Virus record (IMG/VR): IMGVR_UViG_3300044701_002789
Coordinates: 1-64,000 of that record
Reading direction: 5' to 3' (one strand)
DNA: 64,000 nucleotides
Shown: positions 20,141 to 41,566 of the stretch, piece after piece
How the letters are laid out: each line of letters opens with the position of its first letter
How positions within the stretch are numbered: the first letter of the stretch is position 1
Program-made: the position numbers and the translations under genes
The notes under the pieces: model-generated
What the model was told of the DNA's origin: nothing
What the model saw: the letters and a program-made list of their open reading frames with translations, nothing else
The model's database searches: none

Positions 20141-20192
20141 AATCCTTAAAACAATTCAGGTGTTTTTATTTATATGCATATTATTAATTAAT

Positions 20193-29302: not shown

Positions 29303-29401
29303 TCCCGTTCCTTCGGGCGGCGTTTCCGTTCGTTACCATAATAACGAATGAACGAGTGCGTTCCTCGTCGTCCTACTTGCGTCCGCCTGAGCGGATGAAC
29401 G
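29303..29401 (-). ncRNA. tandem glutamine riboswitch aptamers (glnA/Downstream-peptide class)
   Basis: two CGTTCA-hairpin-CG(C/G)AA...GGAACG units directly 5' of the DUF4278 gene. Confidence 0.75.
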
Positions 29402-29454
29402 TTGGTCTACGATAGACCATCATAGGTATTTAGTCAAGCCCCTTTACAAACTCT

Positions 29455-33393: not shown

Positions 33394-33401
33394 TATAAAT
33401 A
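33394..33401 (+). promoter_or_regulatory. T4-type late promoter TATAAATA of the coat-like operon
   Basis: exact consensus. Confidence 0.75.
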
Positions 33402-33404
33402 ATC

Positions 33405-33633
33405 ATGAGAAGAGAAATCTTCTCATTAGAGACAAGATGTATTACTAAAAGATTCCATTTTTGGTTCTTTCATTAATGCTTCACTCTAATTGGGTAATAT
33501 AATCCAATTCTAAAGAGAAGTAATCCCAGACGACTCATCTACAGTCGCCTGTGGAACTGAATCGTCTGGCATTATGTCAGGGAAGGATTGGATTATATCC
33601 CTCTCCAATTAACCTTTCTTTCCCTTAAGGAGA
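33405..33633 (+). ncRNA. candidate structured 5' leader (multiple hairpins)
   Basis: ATGAGAAGA-GAAA-TCTTCTCAT; CCAGACGA..TCTACAG-TCGC-CTGTGGA..TCGTCTGG; GGGAAGG-ATTGGA..TCCAAT..TTCCC next to the RBS. Confidence 0.55.
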
Positions 33634-33639
33634 AACAAA

Positions 33640-34467
33640 ATGGCAGATCCCGTATATATGCCCGATCCTTGGGCAGCACTTGCCGCACAACACTCAGACA
33701 TTCGTAGAGAAGGTTCTGTAGAACGTGGCGAGATTCGTTTTGATGTTGCTACTCGCACTGCTGACAACCGTTATGCTAATGCTATCGGTCAAGCAGATAT
33801 TCGTAGAGAGCAAGCATTAGGTTTTGGTGATGTAAAGTATTCTATTGCAGAACACTCAGAATCAACCAATCGTGACATTCTAACTACAGGTCATAATAAT
33901 CAAGTTAAAATTGATGAAGCTGCTGATAAAATTCAGCAAAGAGCTACTGATTTTTATCTTGCCGGTCAAGCAAGAGATTTTGATGCTTCCCGCGATCTTG
34001 CTGCTCTCAAAGCAAGTCAAGATATGGCTGCTCAAAAACTCAGCACAGAGATTCTTCTTTCTACTGAAAGAACTGCTACTGCTGCTGCTCTTGAGTCCGC
34101 TAAGGTTGCTGCTGCTGTAGCACTTGGTCAATCACAACTCAGCAAAGAAATTGCTGAGAGCAAGTATGATATCAGCAAGCAAATTGCTTATGAAAATGAA
34201 AAGACCCGTGATCTTGTTAATGCACTTAAGAATGACGAACTTAATCGTCTTCTTATTGAGCGTAACACCGATCTAACTCATTGCCGTCACGACTATTGGG
34301 GTGCCCGTGATGGACTCTTCAATAGTCAGTTCGCTGCACTATCTTCCCAAGTTAATTCTCAGTTAAACTCACTCAACAGTCAGATTGCTGAGACCCGTCA
34401 GGGTATGGTTAACTTTGGAACCATGGCTGGTGTTGGTCAATCCTCAACCAGCAACGCAGTTCGCTGA
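33640..34467 (+). CDS. alpha-helical/coiled-coil protein, putative major matrix/coat component
   Basis: strong TAAGGAGA RBS, GCT/CGT-rich codons, heptad-like Ala/Gln-rich sequence. Confidence 0.8.
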   Translation: MADPVYMPDPWAALAAQHSDIRREGSVERGEIRFDVATRTADNRYANAIGQADIRREQALGFGDVKYSIAEHSESTNRDILTTGHNNQVKIDEAADKIQQRATDFYLAGQARDFDASRDLAALKASQDMAAQKLSTEILLSTERTATAAALESAKVAAAVALGQSQLSKEIAESKYDISKQIAYENEKTRDLVNALKNDELNRLLIERNTDLTHCRHDYWGARDGLFNSQFAALSSQVNSQLNSLNSQIAETRQGMVNFGTMAGVGQSSTSNAVR

Positions 34468-34485: not shown

Positions 34486-34519
34486 GGGGGAAGGTTGCCC
34501 ACTTCCTTCCCCTTTTTTT
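34486..34519 (+). terminator. intrinsic terminator inside the operon
   Basis: GGGGAAGG...CCTTCCCC followed by T7. Confidence 0.7.
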
Positions 34520-34533
34520 AAAGGAGAATAACT

Positions 34534-35115
34534 ATGGACTCAGCAGAAAGAAAACTCATTGATCTTTATAATCTTCTTGCACAATATCAAAGAAGTAATG
34601 ATCCGAATCTAATTGAAAACATTCAATCTTTACGATCACAGATTACCGAACTATTGAATACCCGTGTTGGAGGAAATGACAACATCAACATCGTTATAGA
34701 TGGAGATGATTGCCCTGATGAGTGCCCTCCAGGACCTCCAGGACCCCCCGGAGAACAAGGTCCACCGGGACCACAGGGACCTCCAGGACCCCCTGGAGAA
34801 CCAGGAGTGTGTACCTGCAAATGCAAAAGCATCCTGGTTTCAGACGATTATTCTGCTACTTGTGATGACTATTACATCGGTGTCAATAGCAACGAACCTG
34901 TTACTATTTCATTACCTGAAAACTGTACCGATTGTTGTGAAATTATTGTAAAAGCAGAAATGGGTCCACCATTGGGTAATCGTAAAGTTACTGTAACTAC
35001 TTCTGATGGATCATTGATTGATGGTGCTGATGATTACATTATCACAGTACCTTATGGAACAGTTTATGTGATCTGTAGAGGTGGCGATTGGTATATTATC
35101 TCAGCAAAATTATAA
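34534..35115 (+). CDS. short collagen-repeat, Cys-rich protein
   Basis: N-terminal coiled coil, CPDEC-(GPP/GEQ)x9-CTCKCK, C-terminal beta domain DDYYIGVN..VTISLP. Confidence 0.85.
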   Translation: MDSAERKLIDLYNLLAQYQRSNDPNLIENIQSLRSQITELLNTRVGGNDNINIVIDGDDCPDECPPGPPGPPGEQGPPGPQGPPGPPGEPGVCTCKCKSILVSDDYSATCDDYYIGVNSNEPVTISLPENCTDCCEIIVKAEMGPPLGNRKVTVTTSDGSLIDGADDYIITVPYGTVYVICRGGDWYIISAKL

Positions 35116-35117
35116 CA

Positions 35118-35876
35118 ATGAAATTTAATATTCAACCATCTCTTCCTGACGATAGAGATTACATCTATAAAAATGATAGCACAGAAGTTCTTAGAGAATC
35201 TGTGGATCTTCGTGAATGGGATACAATTGTGGAATCACAAAATTCATTAGGTAGTTGTTCTGCAAATGCAATTACAAATGCTTATGAACTTTGTGTGAAT
35301 CGCATGTATCCAGAATACTTCACTCATCTAAGTAGATTATTTCTTTATTACAATGCTCGTGTTGAATACGGAATCATTGAAGAAGATGAAGGAATGTTTT
35401 TGAAAGATGGTCTGAAATCATTATCAAAGTTTGGTATTTGCACCGAAGAGTTATGGCCCTATAATCCAGAAAACTTTACAGTACAACCAACTGAAGAATG
35501 TTATGAAGATGCAAAGAAAAGAAAAATTTCAAAGTATCAAAAACTCATTAGCATTTACTACATGACTCAAGTGTTGAATTACAACAAACCAGTTGTATTT
35601 GGAATGCAAATTTACGATAGCTTCATGGATCTAAATGAGCGTATTTCAACTGTAACATTTCCTTCACGAAAGGAAAAAAGTCTTGGTGGTCATGCAATGT
35701 GTATGGTAGGATATGACTTAGGTAAGAAACTGTTTTTAGCAAAGAACAGTTTTGGTACTGATTGGGGCGATAAGGGATACTGTTGGATTCCTTTTGATTA
35801 TGTAAGACAGGAAGGATACGACATTTGGACTTTTGATATACCCAATCAAACCGGAGAAAACAATGTACTATCCTAG
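35118..35876 (+). CDS. papain-like cysteine protease (C1A)
   Basis: SVDLR..QNSLGSCSA, LSRLFLYY, GGHAMCMVGY, KNSFGTDWGDKGY. Confidence 0.93.
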   Translation: MKFNIQPSLPDDRDYIYKNDSTEVLRESVDLREWDTIVESQNSLGSCSANAITNAYELCVNRMYPEYFTHLSRLFLYYNARVEYGIIEEDEGMFLKDGLKSLSKFGICTEELWPYNPENFTVQPTEECYEDAKKRKISKYQKLISIYYMTQVLNYNKPVVFGMQIYDSFMDLNERISTVTFPSRKEKSLGGHAMCMVGYDLGKKLFLAKNSFGTDWGDKGYCWIPFDYVRQEGYDIWTFDIPNQTGENNVLS

Positions 35877-35994
35877 ACCCTACTATCCTTATTACAGGAG
35901 ATATTATGACTATTATGACTACTATCGTTATGGGTGCAATCCTTATTATCACAGATATTGCCCTTATTACTCATATTATCCATACTATTATTAA
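35863..35994 (+). CDS. 43-aa Tyr-rich peptide (23 Tyr)
   Basis: GGAG RBS; MYYPRPYYPYYRRYYDYYDYYRYGCNPYYHRYCPYYSYYPYYY; missing from the ORF track. Confidence 0.8.
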   Translation: MYYPRPYYPYYRRYYDYYDYYRYGCNPYYHRYCPYYSYYPYYY

Positions 35995-36009
35995 ATAGGA
36001 GAATTTAAA

Positions 36010-36258
36010 ATGTATTATAGATATCAACCATATCCTTATTATAACAGATATTATAATCTAAATCCATATTATTATGGAAGATATTATAATCCTTATTACA
36101 ACTATCAAAGAAATATAATTGATAGTCAGATTTCTGATGTGAATCAGAGTATTAATAATTTTGGTTCAATGACGGATGTGATTCAAGATGCAAACGTCTA
36201 TCAACTTATGACACCTGAACCTGAAAATGTTGGAATCTGTACTGAACCACCCGCATAA
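36010..36258 (+). CDS. Tyr/Asn/Pro-rich small protein
   Basis: AGGAG RBS; N-terminal NPYY repeats. Confidence 0.8.
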   Translation: MYYRYQPYPYYNRYYNLNPYYYGRYYNPYYNYQRNIIDSQISDVNQSINNFGSMTDVIQDANVYQLMTPEPENVGICTEPPA

Positions 36259-36262
36259 TTAA

Positions 36263-36297
36263 GGGGAGTGATTTTTAGATCACTCCCTCTTTTTTTT
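36263..36297 (+). terminator. intrinsic terminator ending the plus-strand operon
   Basis: GGGAGTGAT...ATCACTCCC followed by a T run. Confidence 0.8.
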
Positions 36298-36298
36298 A

Positions 36299-38204: not shown

Positions 38205-39299
38205 TTATGGTCTCGTCCATCCATAACAAGATTTTCTTACGCCTCGCAAAACGGCATCAAGACCACATTTGATATTATGTTCTTTTGAAAATTCTGTTAT
38301 ATTATTGAAAGTATAGATTATTCCTTCTGGACTTTTAATTTTATAAATTTTCTTTTCTAAAATTGTTTCCGGTAAAGTCCATCCTTTATGTTGTTTATGT
38401 CTTTTGCCCAATACCTGAGAAATACACCCATCATCTAAATTATACTTACTACAAAATGTTACAATATTTTCAAAGATAATTATTTCACCATTTGGATTTT
38501 TTAGTTTATGTATTTTTTTATTCCTTTCTAATGCCTTCCTTTTAATGTTTTCAATAGTTTCTGAGTTATGTTTTTTCCCATACATAGGATTTCCTTCACC
38601 AGAAAATCTTTCACTTTTATTTTCTAAAAATCCAGGAGAGAATATACCAAGACCAAGTTCTTTCATCTTATTTCCATTTCTTTTTCCATTTTTACTTCTT
38701 TCTTCAAAAGATAGACCACAAATTCCACTTTTATTATCTCTATTTTTAGCACCACCTATTTTTCCAGCAGCACTTCTTTCTTCAAATCCAAATCCACATA
38801 CTCCAAGTCCAAGTTCTTTATTTTTTTGACCTGCTTTCTTACTATTTTCTTGTTTTTGTTCTGGAGTTAATGAAAATATTCCAAGTCCATTTTCTTTTGC
38901 ATAATTTCCATTTTTTACTCGTTGTTCTTTTGTGAGAGAGCAAACTCCTCTTTTTAATTCTGCATTCTGGTTTCCAATTACCTTTCCGTGTCTTCTTCTT
39001 GCTTTTCTAACACTTTCGCTAGGAATATATCCACTTACACCATCACCGCCATTAGTAAGATTACGAAGAATACCAGTTCCATTATCTTTTCTACCAAACA
39101 CAGCAATCATATAAATTTCGTGCTTAAATGCTTCTTGTTCGGTTAAGTTTTGTTTGAGAAAGATTATTCTTGATTTGTCTTTGGGTGGAGAGACACTTTC
39201 TTTTTTACCTTTTATAAAACATCGGTCATCTTTTCCTTTACCAATATAATAAGGTGTTCTGTCTTCTCTCAAATAAGCATAGGTGTAAAAATCATTCAT
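38205..39299 (-). CDS. free-standing GIY-YIG-like homing endonuclease with NUMOD3 and repeat DNA-binding domains
   Basis: FYTYAYLREDRTPYYIGKG..E..LRNLTNGGDG; SGEGNPMYGKKH. Confidence 0.85.
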   Translation of the reverse strand: MNDFYTYAYLREDRTPYYIGKGKDDRCFIKGKKESVSPPKDKSRIIFLKQNLTEQEAFKHEIYMIAVFGRKDNGTGILRNLTNGGDGVSGYIPSESVRKARRRHGKVIGNQNAELKRGVCSLTKEQRVKNGNYAKENGLGIFSLTPEQKQENSKKAGQKNKELGLGVCGFGFEERSAAGKIGGAKNRDNKSGICGLSFEERSKNGKRNGNKMKELGLGIFSPGFLENKSERFSGEGNPMYGKKHNSETIENIKRKALERNKKIHKLKNPNGEIIIFENIVTFCSKYNLDDGCISQVLGKRHKQHKGWTLPETILEKKIYKIKSPEGIIYTFNNITEFSKEHNIKCGLDAVLRGVRKSCYGWTRP

Positions 39300-40032
39300 C
39301 GGTTTTAGGTTTTCTATACTTCCAATTTTGCTTTCCAGTATTTACTTCTTTTGTTCTTTCTATAATTTTATCTCTACAAATACCTTCACCATAATTTGGA
39401 TTATTTTCTCCCGACCAAGCACCTCTTTCTATTGCTTTTTGCGAGATTTTATCCCTAACTTCCTTATCGTCCATAGGATTTCCATAATCGTTTCTATGCC
39501 TTATTTTAACTTCCATTTCGTCTAATGATTTTCTAATCCAAACCATTCCACATCCCAAGATTGATTTTATTTCTTTGAGAGTTTTACCTTCAGTATAAAG
39601 TTCAGCAATTTTTTCTGGCGGGCAATTTTTTCTCAACTCCTTTATTTTATTTTCATTCACTACTTGTAAATGATTTTTCTTTTTCATTATTTTACTATGA
39701 TTTGGTCTTTTCTTCCCTCTACGAAGTTCTCCCATTCTTTTTCTTTGTTCTTCTGTATAAACATACCCAGAAGGACCATCTCCACCATCTGTTAGATTAT
39801 AAAGAATACCAGTTTCCAAATCCTTTCTACCAAAGACAGAAATCATATAAATTTCGTGCTTAAATGCTTCTTCTTCAGTTAGATTTTTCTTTAATATTAA
39901 AATCCTATTCCTTGATGGAACATAAGCACTATGCCTTTTTCTATCATATGCTCGTTTTCCTTTTCCCTTACCAATATAGTAAGGAGTTCCATCTTCACGC
40001 AAATAAGCATAAGTATAAAATACATTTTCCAT
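39292..40032 (-). CDS. free-standing GIY-YIG-like homing endonuclease
   Basis: FYTYAYLREDGTPYYIGKG..LYNLTDGGDG; SGENNPNYG; own late promoter at about 40062-40069. Confidence 0.85.
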   Translation of the reverse strand: MENVFYTYAYLREDGTPYYIGKGKGKRAYDRKRHSAYVPSRNRILILKKNLTEEEAFKHEIYMISVFGRKDLETGILYNLTDGGDGPSGYVYTEEQRKRMGELRRGKKRPNHSKIMKKKNHLQVVNENKIKELRKNCPPEKIAELYTEGKTLKEIKSILGCGMVWIRKSLDEMEVKIRHRNDYGNPMDDKEVRDKISQKAIERGAWSGENNPNYGEGICRDKIIERTKEVNTGKQNWKYRKPKTDE

Positions 40033-40121
40033 TACTTCCAATCCAAAGTTAGTTCTATACTTATTTATAAAAAAAGGAACTCCGAAGAGTTCCCTTATTA
40101 TACCATTATTTGGTTTTTATA

Positions 40122-40199
40122 TCAACCAATAGAAGGAGCAGTTAGAGCAACCGAAGTTGTTTCCGCTGCCGCCAAATCTAAAGGAAAGTTGTGTGCATT
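40122..40199 (-). CDS. psbA: photosystem II D1, exon 2
   Basis: NAHNFPLDLAAAETTSVALTAPSIG*. Confidence 0.95.
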   Translation of the reverse strand, partial: NAHNFPLDLAAAETTSVALTAPSIG

Positions 40200-40411
40200 C
40201 TTAAACTTTCCTTAACTATCTGATATTGCTATCAGGATTGGACTATATCATCACCATTTCTGGTGTCGGACGCTTATTCCTGTTATTAAGGGAACTATAT
40301 CCCTCAGGTAGTCTCTGAACCTTTCTTAGATGTATCTAAGACTTGGATGCTGATTGCCCACTTGGGGTTTCCAGCAATTCATCCGATTTAAAGAGCGCAA
40401 AGCACAACTTG
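40200..40411 (-). mobile_element. group I intron (212 nt, no ORF) in psbA after codon 334
   Basis: 5' exon ends in U (CGT), intron ends in G; P AATTGCTGGAAA, Q AATCAGCA, R TCAGAGACTA, S GATATAGTCC; P1 GAGCGT/GCGCTC. Confidence 0.95.
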
Positions 40412-41413
40412 ACGCTCGTGCATAACCTCCATTCCCAGTCCTGCTCTTGTTAAAATGTCCGCCCAAGTAGGAACTACTCGGTTCTGACTATCCAGAATAC
40501 TCTGGTTGAAATTTAGTCCGTTGAGGTTAAAAGCCATCGTAGAAACCCCGAGAGCAGTGAACCAAATACCAACTACAGGCCAAGCGGCGAGGAAGAAGTG
40601 TAGTGAACGGGAGTTATTGAAGGACGCATATTGGAAAATAAGACGACCGAAATAACCGTGTGCAGCCACGATGTTATAAGTTTCTTCCTCTTGACCGAAC
40701 TTGTAACCATAGTTCTGAGATTCAGTCTCAGTGGTTTCACGAACCAGTGAAGAAGTCACAAGTGAACCATGCATAGCACTGAACAGTGACCCACCAAACA
40801 CACCTGCAACACCGAGCATATGGAACGGATGCATAAGAATGTTATGTTCTGCCTGGAACACAAGCATGTAGTTGAAAGTGCCAGAGATACCTAGAGGCAT
40901 TCCATCACTGAAAGAACCTTGACCGAAAGGATAAACAAGGAATACGGCAGTGGCAGCAGCAACAGGAGCACTGTAAGCAACCATAATCCAAGGACGCATA
41001 CCTAGACGATAAGAAAGTTCCCATTCACGACCCATATAGCAGAAGACACCAATCAGGAAGTGAAATACAACAAGTTGGTAAGGACCACCATTATAAAGCC
41101 ATTCATCAAGACTCATTGCTTCCCAGATAGGATAAAAATGAAGTCCGATTGCATTAGAAGAAGGAACAACAGCACCAGAGATAATGTTGTTTCCATACAT
41201 GAGTGAACCAGAAACAGGTTCACGAATGCCATCAATATCTACAGGAGGTGCAGCAATGAAGGCAATAACAAAGCAGATGGTCGCAGCAAGAAGGCAAGGA
41301 ATCATAAGAACTCCGAACCACCCGACATACAACCTATTGTTGGTTGAAGTCACCCACTCGCAGAAGTCCTGCCAGGGATTAGAAATTGAACGTGTAGCAA
41401 TTGTAGCAGTCAT
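40412..41413 (-). CDS. psbA: photosystem II D1, exon 1 (334 codons)
   Basis: unambiguous D1 sequence from MTATIAT to GMEVMHER. Confidence 0.98.
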
Positions 41414-41424
41414 AAGAATTAAAA

Positions 41425-41510
41425 AGAAAATAAGATGAATCCAGGGAAGATTCTGTGCGTTATTTTCCTTCTCTACCCTCAAGAGAAGGTAAGATGAGAG
41501 ACGTATTTTA
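41425..41510 (-). ncRNA. PhotoRC-II-like psbA leader RNA
   Basis: TACGTCTCTCAT..CCTTCTCT-TGAGGGT-AGAGAAGG..TTCCCTG in the psbA 5' UTR; recognised from memory of the motif. Confidence 0.6.
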
Positions 41511-41566
41511 CTTGCAAAGTCCCGGTAAGCAAGGCAACAATGTCAGGGTTTCCTGACCTGTTGATG

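What the first reader, a model, noticed from the sequence alone, without database searches (positions are those of the whole stretch)
35863..35994. Unannotated 43-aa peptide that is 53% tyrosine
MYYPRPYYPYYRRYYDYYDYYRYGCNPYYHRYCPYYSYYPYYY has its own GGAG RBS, overlaps the protease stop, and uses mixed TAT/TAC codons, so it is not a simple DNA repeat. The YY-x periodicity suggests self-assembly, phase separation or cross-linking. The next gene begins with a similar Y/N/P-rich segment.
Basis: partly seen in the sequence, partly recalled or inferred. Interest (0 to 1): 0.65.

Follow-up and report, generated by a model that had tools for sequence, protein, structure and literature searches.

The report
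Tyrosine-rich microprotein of a cyanophage
A 43-residue protein that is half tyrosine is a real gene under selection that gene callers almost always miss; it lies in a late fibre-gene operon of an uncultured jumbo cyanophage and most likely acts as a sticky aromatic cement for a collagen-like virion fibre, a kind of phage protein I found no description of.

Summary
The ORF at 35863-35994 encodes 43 residues with 23 Tyr. It has a GGAG six bases before the ATG, overlaps the stop of the papain-like peptidase gene by 14 nt, and is not a DNA repeat. It is far beyond chance: 23 Tyr against a maximum of 7-9 in simulated genomes.

It is a real gene. I found 21 distinct orthologues in related freshwater and marine cyanomyovirus contigs. 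All keep the frame, the ATG and nearly always the GGAG. dN/dS is about 0.11 in the Tyr frame and 1.1-1.5 in the other frames that stay open. Gene callers miss it or call the wrong frame. Only one orthologue exists among 1.8 billion representative proteins.

It is the fifth gene of a conserved operon. In order: a T4-type late-promoter motif, a conserved structured leader, a 190-residue coiled-coil rod, a collagen-like fibre protein, a C1 peptidase, the Tyr peptide, and a paralogue carrying a docking helix shared with the rod.

The best reading, which is inferred and not shown, is a sticker-dense Tyr/Arg/Pro/Cys cement or adhesive on a virion fibre. The main rivals are a partner of the peptidase, a fibre chaperone and an intracellular condensate. 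No expression data could be obtained.

The parts
33394..33401 (+). T4-type late-promoter motif TATAAATA upstream of the operon
   Evidence: Exact motif. The same motif lies 237-351 nt upstream of the first gene in 12 of 16 related loci, one of them as CATAAATA. It also precedes the baseplate hub gene by about 27 nt at 20167-20174. This is a motif match only; no transcript mapping was possible.
33402..33639 (+). Conserved structured 5' leader RNA of the operon
   Evidence: The 10-locus alignment A6 has long invariant blocks. RNAalifold predicts 61 pairs, 16 of them with compensatory double changes, and the last hairpin overlaps the Shine-Dalgarno sequence. No Rfam family matches.
33640..34467 (+). 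P0005, a 275-aa coiled-coil rod protein with a conserved C-terminal docking motif
   Evidence: AF2 predicts one helix over residues 74-263, with pLDDT above 90 for about 80-200. There is no Pfam or NCBIfam hit. The C-terminal 26 residues are nearly invariant. Synteny is conserved.
34486..34509 (+). Terminator-like hairpin between gene 1 and gene 2, possibly a partial terminator
   Evidence: Pattern scan. Its function was not tested.
34534..35115 (+). P0004, a collagen-like fibre protein: N-terminal helices, GPP repeats and a Cys-rich C-terminal beta domain
   Evidence: Pfam Collagen and PHROG tail fibre/tail collar hits. Repeat length varies between relatives. The AF2 model has low confidence (pLDDT 55), yet its Foldseek top hits are all phage virion attachment domains: Solidus gp83 tailspike at E 1.4e-5, KP1 baseplate, Pa223 capsid spike, T4 baseplate, CBA120 TSP4 and T4 gp9/gp10.
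35118..35876 (+). P0003, a papain-family (C1) cysteine peptidase with the mature domain only; no signal peptide or propeptide is evident in the sequence (read by eye, not run through a predictor)
   Evidence: Pfam Peptidase_C1 at E 1.4e-15. Q41, C47, H192 and N210 are invariant in 17 sequences. The ATG at 35118 is used in relatives; a TTG at 35088 is an alternative start.
35853..35856 (+). Shine-Dalgarno GGAG of the Tyr-peptide gene, embedded in the Gly-Glu/Asp codons of the peptidase
   Evidence: GGAG lies six bases before the ATG in 19 of 21 variants; the Gly codon is always GGA.
35863..35994 (+). The finding: P0001, a 43-aa Tyr/Pro/Arg/Cys microprotein gene
   Evidence: details in the report.
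35997..36002 (+). Shine-Dalgarno AGGAGA of the next gene, in a 15-nt spacer
   Evidence: The spacer is 12-15 nt and carries GGAG(A) in 12 of 15 loci where the next gene was placed; in the other three it is 8-9 nt without a full GGAG.
36010..36258 (+). P0002, an 82-aa paralogue: a Y/N/P-rich N-terminus, a helix motif shared with the P0005 C-terminus, and a Pro-rich tail with a conserved Cys
   Evidence: 144 homologues, all hypothetical. Alignment A1. hhalign against P0005 gives probability 93.5% and E 2.3e-7 over 34 columns. hhalign of its N-terminus against the Tyr-peptide family gives probability 73% and E 3e-5, inflated by composition.
36263..36298 (+). Intrinsic terminator closing the operon: an 11-bp stem followed by a T-run
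   Evidence: the sequence is.

Best explanation
P0001 is a genuine protein-coding gene translated from its own start. It is the fifth gene of a conserved late operon in a lineage of uncultured T4-like cyanophages that carry psbA.

The operon encodes a long coiled-coil rod (P0005), one or two fibre proteins (one collagen-like) whose C-terminal domain resembles virion attachment domains, and a papain-like peptidase. After these come two Tyr-rich small proteins. The second, P0002, has the same Tyr-rich module fused to a short helix that is homologous to the C-terminal end of the rod.

My reading is that the Tyr-rich module is a non-globular 'sticker' polypeptide: about 47% Tyr, 15% Pro, 11% Arg, no Lys, net charge +2 to +5, and usually two Cys 7-9 residues apart. 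It would self-associate through aromatic stacking and Tyr-Arg contacts, and lock by disulfides once outside the cell. P0002 would tether this material to the rod or fibre through the shared helix. The free peptide P0001 would co-assemble with it as filler or cement, or as an adhesive pad, on a virion appendage.

Shown: the gene is real, under selection, in conserved synteny, and shares motifs with its neighbours. Inferred: late expression, virion location and the cement mechanism.
For: Gene reality
- 21 distinct variants were found, in IMG/VR, JGI, ENA and Tara contigs whose peptidase is 57-100% identical. All keep the ATG, and all indels are in frame.
- Median NG86 dN/dS is 0.11 in the Tyr frame, against 1.49 in the +2 frame and 1.15 in the -3 frame.
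- 39% of aligned Tyr-Tyr codon pairs switch between TAT and TAC.
- GGAG lies six bases before the ATG in 19 of 21 variants, and the downstream spacer with its own RBS is 8-15 nt.
- In L023 and L024 the peptidase stop lies just before the ATG, so a frameshift fusion is not needed.

Operon and late, virion context
- Synteny of the genes is conserved.
- TATAAATA is conserved upstream, as it is at the baseplate hub gene.
- The operon ends with a strong terminator.
- P0005 is one helix of about 190 residues.
- P0004 has collagen repeats and PHROG tail-fibre hits.
- The Foldseek top hits for its C-terminal domain are all phage tailspike, baseplate or capsid-spike attachment domains.

Tethering idea
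- P0002 and P0005 share a C-terminal helix motif (hhalign probability 93.5%, E 2.3e-7).

Sticker chemistry
- The composition is conserved while the sequence drifts: mean column identity is 43%, against 66-73% for the neighbouring genes.
- Tyr and Arg are the main drivers of association in low-complexity domains (bioRxiv 10.1101/2024.02.15.580391 and 10.1101/2021.01.01.425046).
- Short synthetic Tyr-rich peptides containing Cys self-assemble, and they need disulfide dimerisation to do so (PMC6382316).
- Tyr-rich ends drive higher-order assembly of collagen-mimetic peptides (PMC11333572; abstract only).
- P0004 has six invariant and four more nearly invariant Cys columns, and about half of the aligned P0002 homologues have a Cys in the tail. 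This fits proteins that end up in an oxidising, extracellular setting.

Independence from the peptidase
- In L027 the peptidase has lost the catalytic-Cys region, yet both Tyr-rich genes are intact.
Against: - There is no direct evidence of transcription, translation or virion location. No RNA run could be listed, and no cultured phage carries the module, so no proteome exists.
- The late promoter is only a motif, and it lies about 240 nt upstream of the first gene.
- The P0004 model that gives the virion-like fold hits has low confidence (pLDDT 55).
- P0001 itself lacks the docking helix, so its attachment to anything is conjecture.
- No phage-encoded tyrosinase, P4H-type oxygenase, radical SAM enzyme or P450 was found for covalent Tyr chemistry.
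- Tight translational coupling to the peptidase points equally to a functional link with that enzyme.
- Papain-type enzymes favour an aromatic residue at P2 followed by Arg (own knowledge), which would make this peptide a likely substrate.
Confidence: 0.4

Rival explanations
1. P0001 is a partner of the adjacent C1 peptidase. It would be either a trans-acting inhibitor or chaperone that keeps the propeptide-less cytoplasmic enzyme silent until assembly or lysis, or its dedicated substrate.
For: The gene overlaps or abuts the peptidase stop in all variants, which is classic translational coupling. The enzyme shows no propeptide (my reading of the sequence) and keeps an invariant catalytic Q/C/H/N set. 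Tyr-Arg and Tyr-Tyr-Arg motifs are conserved and match the aromatic-P2 preference of papain-type enzymes (own knowledge). Staphostatins set a precedent for inhibitors encoded immediately after a cysteine protease (own knowledge).
Against: In L027 the peptidase has lost its catalytic Cys region while both Tyr genes stay intact. More distant peptidase homologues (53% identity or less, plus a Burkholderia phage and Lak phages) have no Tyr-rich ORF next to them. The paralogue P0002 is tied by a shared motif to the rod protein, not to the peptidase.
Confidence: 0.17
2. P0001 and P0002 are assembly chaperones for the fibre proteins encoded upstream. They would act like the small chaperone and adhesin genes that follow tail-fibre genes in T4-like phages, and would be absent from the finished virion.
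For: They sit directly downstream of the fibre genes in the same operon. They are small, and P0002 shares a helix with the rod protein.
Against: No similarity to any known fibre chaperone family was found in Pfam, PHROGs or NCBIfam. A 47-53% Tyr low-complexity sequence is unlike known chaperones, which are folded.
Confidence: 0.12
3. P0001 is an intracellular condensate former or nucleic-acid binder. It would be a basic Tyr/Arg peptide that phase-separates with RNA or DNA in the infected cell, with no virion role.
For: Net charge is +2 to +5 with Arg only and no Lys. Tyr/Arg grammar is known to drive phase separation (10.1101/2024.02.15.580391).
Against: The operon context is fibre-like, not replication or transcription. 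Sticker density is far above that of known liquid-forming domains, with few polar spacers. A conserved Cys pair is hard to explain in the reducing cytoplasm.
Confidence: 0.1
4. P0001 is a RiPP precursor whose Tyr residues are cross-linked (biaryl or cyclophane type) and which is then trimmed by the C1 peptidase.
For: It is a short ORF next to a peptidase, with many Tyr and two Cys.
Against: There is no maturase in the operon, where every gene is accounted for. No radical SAM enzyme or P450 occurs anywhere in the complete 258-kb genome, and the controls responded. There is no exporter. The whole length is conserved in composition, with no leader/core split.
Confidence: 0.04
5. The ORF acts through its translation, not its product. 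It would be a Tyr-codon-rich leader that senses charged tRNA-Tyr and tunes expression of the downstream gene.
For: 23 of 43 codons are Tyr. ARAGORN calls no tRNA-Tyr in the 29-gene phage tRNA array, and the single intron-mode call is unreliable.
Against: The spacer to the next gene is only 8-15 nt and carries its own RBS, leaving no room for alternative hairpins. Non-Tyr positions (Pro, Arg, Asp, Cys) are also conserved, and dN/dS is 0.11. The downstream gene is a paralogue, not a Tyr-pathway gene.
Confidence: 0.03
6. It is a non-functional by-product: an ORF kept open by composition or by constraints from the overlapping peptidase gene.
For: Tyr-codon-rich DNA leaves several frames open by itself. 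Gene callers ignore it.
Against: Only 14 nt overlap the peptidase in the window, and the overlap reaches at most about 70 nt in relatives, so most of the ORF lies outside that gene. Purifying selection is specific to this frame. The ATG and RBS are conserved. The composition is 15 orders of magnitude beyond chance.
Confidence: 0.02

Closest known systems
Bacillus subtilis outer spore-coat proteins CotC and CotU (tyrosine-rich, forming high-mass cross-linked forms; PMC7944565)
   Same: They are small proteins with extreme Tyr content that build an insoluble extracellular protective layer. Cys- and Tyr-based cross-links are proposed for them. Bacillus surfaces also combine such proteins with collagen-like filaments (BclA; own knowledge).
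   Different: There is no sequence homology. CotC and CotU are rich in Lys and Asp, whereas this family has no Lys at all and uses Arg and Pro. The context here is a phage operon, not sporulation.
Synthetic tyrosine-rich self-assembling peptides such as YYACAYY (PMC6382316)
   Same: They have YY doublets flanking Cys. Assembly depends on disulfide dimerisation plus Tyr stacking, and dityrosine cross-linking is possible.
   Different: Those are 5-7-residue designed peptides. This is a natural 42-53-residue gene product with Pro and Arg spacers, and no assembly data exist for it.
Tyr/Arg 'sticker' grammar of prion-like low-complexity domains such as FUS and hnRNPA1 (10.1101/2024.02.15.580391; 10.1101/2021.01.01.425046)
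   Same: Association is driven by Tyr-Tyr and Tyr-Arg contacts. Composition is conserved while sequence drifts. The N-terminus of P0002 is Y/N/Q-rich like a prion-like domain.
   Different: Stickers make up about 58-65% of residues here, against about 15% in FUS (own knowledge). The spacers are Pro, Arg and Asp rather than Gly, Ser and Gln. The peptide is only 43 residues long. A solid state is more likely than a liquid one.
Mussel foot proteins Mfp-3/Mfp-5 and high-glycine-tyrosine keratin-associated proteins (own knowledge)
   Same: They are small (5-10 kDa) Tyr-rich, Arg-containing proteins that glue or embed fibrous proteins: byssal collagens in one case, keratin filaments in the other.
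   Different: Those are secreted eukaryotic proteins that are Gly-rich. Mfps require conversion of Tyr to DOPA by tyrosinase. No signal peptide is evident and no phage tyrosinase was found (though the control did not respond). There is no homology.
Small accessory genes downstream of T4-like tail-fibre genes: gp38 adhesin/chaperone and gp57A (own knowledge)
   Same: They occupy the same position after fibre genes in a late operon of a T4-like phage. They are small proteins that act on or sit at fibres. The gp38 adhesins also use repetitive, aromatic-decorated non-globular motifs.
   Different: There is no sequence or profile similarity. gp38 is Gly-rich and 250 or more residues long.
Staphostatins, cysteine-protease inhibitors encoded directly after the staphopain genes (own knowledge)
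   Same: The gene follows a papain-like protease immediately and is translationally coupled to it. The protease would be dangerous in the cytoplasm.
   Different: Staphostatins are beta-barrels of about 110 residues. This is a 43-residue low-complexity peptide. The binding prediction gave no answer.

Membership tests
Amino-acid attenuation leader peptides (pheL/hisL type) | Short ORF with a run of codons for the sensed amino acid | tested here: met
   23 of 43 codons are Tyr.
Amino-acid attenuation leader peptides (pheL/hisL type) | Alternative terminator/antiterminator hairpins between the leader ORF and the regulated genes | tested here: not met
   The spacer is 8-15 nt and carries an RBS; no hairpin fits.
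Amino-acid attenuation leader peptides (pheL/hisL type) | Peptide product itself not under selection, and the downstream operon makes that amino acid | tested here: not met
   dN/dS is 0.11 with conserved Pro, Arg and Cys positions. The downstream gene is a Tyr-rich paralogue.
RiPP precursors with aromatic cross-links (biarylitide/cittilin, triceptide/darobactin types) | Adjacent or co-encoded maturase (P450 or radical SAM enzyme) | tested here: not met
   None is in the operon. PF04055 and PF00067 are absent from the complete phage genome, and the controls responded.
RiPP precursors with aromatic cross-links (biarylitide/cittilin, triceptide/darobactin types) | Leader or follower recognition part distinct from a core | tested here: inconclusive
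   P0001 is compositionally uniform along its length. P0002 does have a distinct C-terminal motif.
Bacillus CotC/CotU spore-coat proteins | Sequence homology to the family | tested here: not met
   There are no Pfam or NCBIfam hits. The profile search of 1.84 billion proteins returns only one orthologue, from the same phage module.
Bacillus CotC/CotU spore-coat proteins | Small size and 30% or more Tyr, with Lys/Asp as partner residues | tested here: not met
   Size and Tyr content are met, but Lys is completely absent and Arg and Pro are used instead.
Bacillus CotC/CotU spore-coat proteins | Assembly into cross-linked multimers in an extracellular layer | not testable with these tools
   This needs biochemistry.
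Prion-like / FUS-type low-complexity sticker domains | Tyr (plus Arg) stickers spread along a disordered chain | tested here: met
   Pooled composition is Tyr 46.6% and Arg 11%. In the complex-prediction run the peptide's own fold scored pLDDT below 50.
Prion-like / FUS-type low-complexity sticker domains | Majority of residues are polar spacers (Gly, Ser, Gln, Asn) | tested here: not met
   G, S and N together make up about 10%, and Q does not occur at all. The spacers are Pro, Arg and Asp. The N-terminus of P0002 is closer to this type, being N/Q-containing.
Prion-like / FUS-type low-complexity sticker domains | Reversible phase separation | not testable with these tools
   This needs in vitro work.
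Staphostatin-type co-operonic cysteine-protease inhibitors | Gene immediately downstream of and coupled to the protease gene | tested here: met
   The overlap is 14 nt, and the gene abuts or overlaps the protease gene in all variants.
Staphostatin-type co-operonic cysteine-protease inhibitors | Folded beta-barrel of about 110 residues | tested here: not met
   The products are 42-53 residues of low complexity.
Staphostatin-type co-operonic cysteine-protease inhibitors | Tight complex with the protease | tested here: inconclusive
   The complex prediction returned 'no answer', which is not evidence either way.
Mussel-type DOPA adhesive proteins | Tyrosinase that converts Tyr to DOPA, and a secretion signal | tested here: inconclusive
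   PF00264 was not found in the phage genome, but the control genomes did not respond either. No signal peptide is evident in the sequence (read by eye).

The most novel reading that the evidence does not exclude
This cyanophage lineage builds a virion appendage with a proteinaceous 'aromatic glue'. A free 43-residue Tyr/Arg/Pro/Cys peptide and a tethered paralogue would form a disulfide- and possibly dityrosine-locked cement or adhesive pad on a collagen-like/coiled-coil fibre. That would be a viral counterpart of spore coats, byssus and keratin matrix, and I found no earlier description of a Tyr-rich cement microprotein in any phage (literature and database searches). The operon would in addition be controlled by a new structured leader RNA.
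Probability: 0.25. Interest if true: 0.8.

Novelty: new variant of a known kind. Interest (0 to 1): 0.6.

Why it matters
First, it is a clean example of a strongly selected microprotein gene that standard gene calling misses systematically. The callers either miss it, call the wrong frame, or read the peptidase through it. As a result it is absent from databases of billions of proteins even though its neighbour has 144 entries. Composition-extreme small genes in phages are therefore under-counted.

Second, if the cement reading is right, it adds a new material principle to virion architecture: a sticker-dense aromatic peptide combined with collagen-like and coiled-coil fibres. It would also provide a natural 43-residue Tyr-rich self-assembling peptide for materials work.

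Third, the module lies close to psbA in this lineage of uncultured cyanomyoviruses, which occurs in both freshwater and marine samples. It may therefore bear on how these phages attach to hosts or particles.

Tried and rejected
- Expression data: the look-up of sequencing runs (kind rna) listed no run. None was listed, which is not the same as none existing.
- Complex prediction of the peptidase with the Tyr peptide gave 'no answer', score 0.00, and controls were not run. This is no evidence for or against binding.
- Pfam, PHROGs and NCBIfam gave no hit for P0001, P0002 or P0005.
- The protein atlas gave no usable hit for P0001.
- tblastn of P0001, P0002, P0005, the second fibre protein and the P0004 C-terminal domain against 50,697 phage records found no match. 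The low-complexity filter may hide the Tyr-rich parts. The peptidase alone has distant homologues in a Burkholderia phage, Lak phages and an Alicyclobacillus phage, where it is annotated as an endolysin.
- A PDB sequence search with the P0005 profile found only weak myosin coiled-coil noise. The P0004 profile found only collagen repeats.
- A DNA pattern for PYYxYYPYY across IMG/VR returned 90 stretches. Apart from the known orthologues, these were mostly 9-nt tandem repeats or unrelated proteins, so the family does not extend beyond this lineage.
- A second locus search, using the P0002 alignment, returned only contigs already in hand.
- A programmed frameshift fusing the peptidase to the Tyr tail was considered and rejected. 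The ATG and RBS are conserved, and in L023 and L024 the peptidase stop precedes the ATG.
- A lysis-cassette reading (peptidase as endolysin, small genes as holin or spanin) was rejected, because I see no hydrophobic stretch long enough to span a membrane in either small protein (read by eye).
- Literature searches for tyrosine-rich phage or cyanophage proteins found nothing relevant.
Full report
**What the window is.** The window is the first 64 kb of a complete 258,284-bp IMG/VR virus record with direct terminal repeats.

Positions 1-23.7 kb encode T4-type tail-fibre, baseplate and tail-tube proteins. They are followed by gp32, a gp59-type helicase loader, PhoH and a thymidylate synthase. gp32 is about 62% identical to those of Prochlorococcus and Synechococcus myoviruses.

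The window also carries:
- psbA (Photo_RC, 40388-41482, minus strand), with an adjoining group I intron and a PhotoRC-II RNA;
- a glutamine riboswitch;
- an array of about 30 tRNA genes.

It is therefore an uncultured jumbo T4-like cyanophage. Only genetic code 11 was used.

**Checking the observation.** The ORF at 35863-35994 translates to 43 residues with 23 Tyr.
- GGAG lies at 35853-35856, six bases before the ATG.
- The peptidase ORF stops at 35874-35876, giving a 14-nt overlap.
- Tyr codons are 17 TAT and 6 TAC.
- Tandem Repeats Finder reports only a 24-nt stretch with period 9.
- The background Tyr fraction is 4.2% in long ORFs of this genome. In a six-frame scan only this ORF and its downstream neighbour stand out, with 12 and 10 Tyr per 20 residues against at most 8 elsewhere.
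- The binomial probability is 1.4e-20. Ten Markov simulations of the genome reach at most 9 Tyr per 43 codons.

**Is it a gene?** Using the peptidase as an anchor, 34 related IMG/VR loci were fetched. Every locus whose peptidase is 57% or more identical has a Tyr-rich ORF at the same place. The same is true of a Tara Oceans contig, the contigs of the single called orthologue, and four further contigs sampled through P0002 homologues. In all there are 21 distinct variants of 42-53 residues.
- All start with ATG. 19 of 21 have GGAG six bases upstream, always using the GGA Gly codon of the overlapping peptidase frame.
- All length differences are in frame.
- An open frame alone proves nothing here, because the +2 frame is open in 17 of 17 variants and the -3 frame in 16 of 17. 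Selection does discriminate. Median dN/dS is 0.11 in the Tyr frame, against 1.49 (+2) and 1.15 (-3). Synonymous and non-synonymous codon differences are about equal in the Tyr frame (1223 and 1230) and roughly 1:10 in the +2 frame.
- 39% of aligned Tyr-Tyr codon pairs differ between TAT and TAC.

This is the signature of a translated gene selected for its amino-acid sequence.

**Why it is unannotated.** The word-index search found no candidate. A profile of 16 variants searched against 1.84 billion representative proteins found one protein, a 45-residue orthologue in the same synteny. Searching with that protein found only itself. In the contigs inspected, the callers produced one of three errors:
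- they skipped the ORF;
- they called a 30-36-residue ORF in the +2 frame;
- they extended the peptidase through it.

**The operon.** On the plus strand, inside a region otherwise transcribed from the minus strand, the following genes are syntenic in all relatives:
- P0005, a 275-residue protein;
- P0004, a collagen-like protein;
- in most relatives but not in the window, a 203-residue second fibre protein with the same C-terminal domain;
- the C1 peptidase;
- the Tyr peptide;
- P0002.

A strong intrinsic terminator closes the unit at 36263-36298. A TATAAATA motif, the T4-type late-promoter consensus, lies 240 nt upstream of the first gene. It is conserved at 237-351 nt upstream in 12 of 16 loci. 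The same motif sits about 27 nt before the baseplate hub gene.

The DNA between motif and start codon is more conserved than the genes. It folds into a consensus structure of 61 pairs, 16 of them with compensatory changes, and the last hairpin covers the RBS. It matches no Rfam family.

**The neighbouring proteins.**
- *P0005* is predicted as one helix of about 190 residues with very high confidence over its centre. That makes it a coiled-coil rod.
- *P0004* has N-terminal helices, 7 to about 25 Gly-X-Y triplets depending on the phage, a Cys-rich hinge and a conserved beta domain. Its model has low confidence. Even so, the best Foldseek matches are without exception phage virion attachment modules: a tailspike N-terminal domain at E 1.4e-5, KP1 baseplate proteins, a capsid spike, T4 baseplate proteins, CBA120 TSP4 and T4 gp9/gp10.
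- *The peptidase* is a mature-domain-only papain homologue with invariant Gln, Cys, His and Asn.
- *P0002* has 144 homologues, all unnamed or misnamed. It consists of a Y/N/P-rich N-terminus, a conserved helix motif and a Pro-rich tail, often with one Cys. The helix motif is homologous to the nearly invariant C-terminal end of P0005 (hhalign probability 93.5%, E 2.3e-7). The N-terminus of P0002 aligns with the first 24 residues of the Tyr peptide (probability 73%). Because of the composition bias, I treat this as probable paralogy only.

**Properties of the peptide family.** The pooled composition is Tyr 46.6%, Pro 15%, Arg 11%, Asp 5% and Cys 4%, with no Lys and almost no Glu. Net charge is +2 to +5. 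13 of 17 variants have exactly two Cys, mostly 7-9 residues apart. Mean column identity is 43%, against 66-73% for the neighbours. Composition is therefore held while sequence drifts, as in low-complexity functional regions.

**Interpretation.** I commit to the following, with confidence about 0.4. The Tyr-rich module is a non-globular sticker polypeptide that self-associates by aromatic and Tyr-Arg contacts and is fixed by disulfides outside the cell. P0002 tethers it to the rod through the shared helix. The free peptide co-assembles as cement or as an adhesive pad on a fibre of the virion.

What is shown:
- the gene is real and the synteny is conserved;
- the motif is shared between P0002 and P0005;
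- P0005 is a rod and P0004 has collagen repeats;
- P0004 gives virion-like fold hits.

What is inferred:
- late transcription;
- virion location;
- the physical mechanism.

The physical chemistry rests on published work:
- Tyr/Arg-driven association (10.1101/2024.02.15.580391; 10.1101/2021.01.01.425046);
- Tyr-rich, Cys-containing synthetic peptides that assemble only as disulfide dimers (PMC6382316);
- Tyr-rich ends that organise collagen-mimetic peptides (PMC11333572, abstract only).

The nearest natural analogues are the Tyr-rich spore-coat proteins CotC and CotU (PMC7944565). There is no homology to them.

**Rivals.**
- *A functional link to the peptidase* (inhibitor, chaperone or substrate) is the strongest rival, because of the translational coupling and the aromatic-then-Arg motifs. 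Two facts weaken it. One relative (L027) has lost the catalytic Cys region of the peptidase but keeps both Tyr genes. More distant peptidase homologues have no Tyr ORF nearby.
- *A RiPP reading* lacks any maturase in the operon or in the complete genome.
- *An attenuator-type leader ORF* is excluded by the 8-15-nt spacer and the selection on non-Tyr residues.
- *A chance or by-product ORF* is excluded.

**What failed.**
- No RNA run could be listed, so there is no expression evidence.
- The complex prediction gave no answer.
- No cultured phage carries any non-peptidase gene of the module, so no virion proteome can be consulted.
- No P4H-type oxygenase or tyrosinase was found in the phage. The tyrosinase control did not respond.

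**Verdict.** This is a real, conserved, essentially unannotated microprotein family of extreme composition. It sits in an uncharacterised late fibre operon that also carries an apparently new leader RNA. It has no homologues outside this cyanophage lineage. Its kind, a small Tyr-rich protein associated with fibrous assemblies, exists elsewhere in biology, but I found no description of one in viruses. Interest 0.6.

Noticed in passing
window 33394-33639 (+); alignment A6: There is a conserved, apparently structured leader of 240-320 nt between a TATAAATA late-promoter motif and the first gene of the operon. It has long invariant blocks and 61 predicted pairs, 16 with compensatory changes. Four relatives carry a variable 60-80-nt insert, and the last hairpin overlaps the RBS. 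No Rfam family matches (best: freshwater-2 at 22 bits against a cut-off of 49.9). It is a candidate new cis-regulatory RNA.
   Followed up: partly
window 36097-36198 (P0002 residues 30-63) and 34351-34452 (P0005 residues 238-271): The two proteins share a homologous helix motif of about 30 residues (hhalign probability 93.5%, E 2.3e-7). It looks like a common docking element attached to two very different N-terminal parts.
   Followed up: partly
L036:4839-4949, L144:3392-3490, L146:3349-3444, L147:419-511: Public gene calls at the orthologous site are in the wrong (+2) frame, giving Ile/Val/Met-rich products of 30-36 residues. In several contigs the peptidase call is instead extended by 10-20 codons into the Tyr ORF. 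This is a systematic annotation error.
   Followed up: yes
L027:4001-4591: In this relative the peptidase has in-frame deletions of about 70 residues that remove the catalytic-Cys region. The two Tyr-rich genes downstream are intact.
   Followed up: yes
L004-L007, L012, L018-L019, L022-L024, L027, L036, L142-L144 and L146 (for example L036:3409-4020): Most relatives have an extra 203-residue gene between the collagen-like gene and the peptidase. It has no collagen repeats, but its C-terminal part resembles that of P0004 by eye. The window lacks this gene. The number of collagen triplets in P0004 varies from about 7 to about 25 between relatives.
   Followed up: partly
window 38205-41545 (-): psbA (Photo_RC, 40388-41482) adjoins a group I intron (40219-40421). 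A NUMOD3-type homing endonuclease ORF (38205-39299) lies nearby, and a PhotoRC-II RNA (41454-41545) lies upstream. The Tyr-peptide operon lies within 3-5 kb of psbA in the three other contigs where psbA was visible (L144, L145, L147).
   Followed up: no
window 54983-62345 (-): The tRNA array has 29 genes by ARAGORN and 30 tRNA matches by Rfam. Three long (112-121 nt) tRNA-like genes are seen only by Rfam or in ARAGORN's intron mode. No clear tRNA-Tyr is present. One intron-mode call of Tyr(AUA) at 54982-55094 was not reproduced on the whole genome. This is curious for a phage that encodes a 53%-Tyr protein.
   Followed up: partly
window 29355-29403 (-): A glutamine riboswitch aptamer (glnA type) matches at 38.7 bits against a cut-off of 35.
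   Followed up: no
L055, L064, L079, L086, L100, L109, L125 and others: Unrelated viral contigs encode 300-730-residue proteins rich in Lys and Glu that contain a tract of Tyr-Gly-Pro repeats. Several small ORFs with Tyr-rich tails were also seen (L077, L078, L092). These were not examined further.
   Followed up: no
L005:5200-5622, L024:5668-6102: In several relatives the operon is followed on the same strand by a DUF7201 coiled-coil gene. In three of them (L022-L024) there is also a Dps/ferritin-like gene. Neither gene follows the operon in the window.
   Followed up: partly
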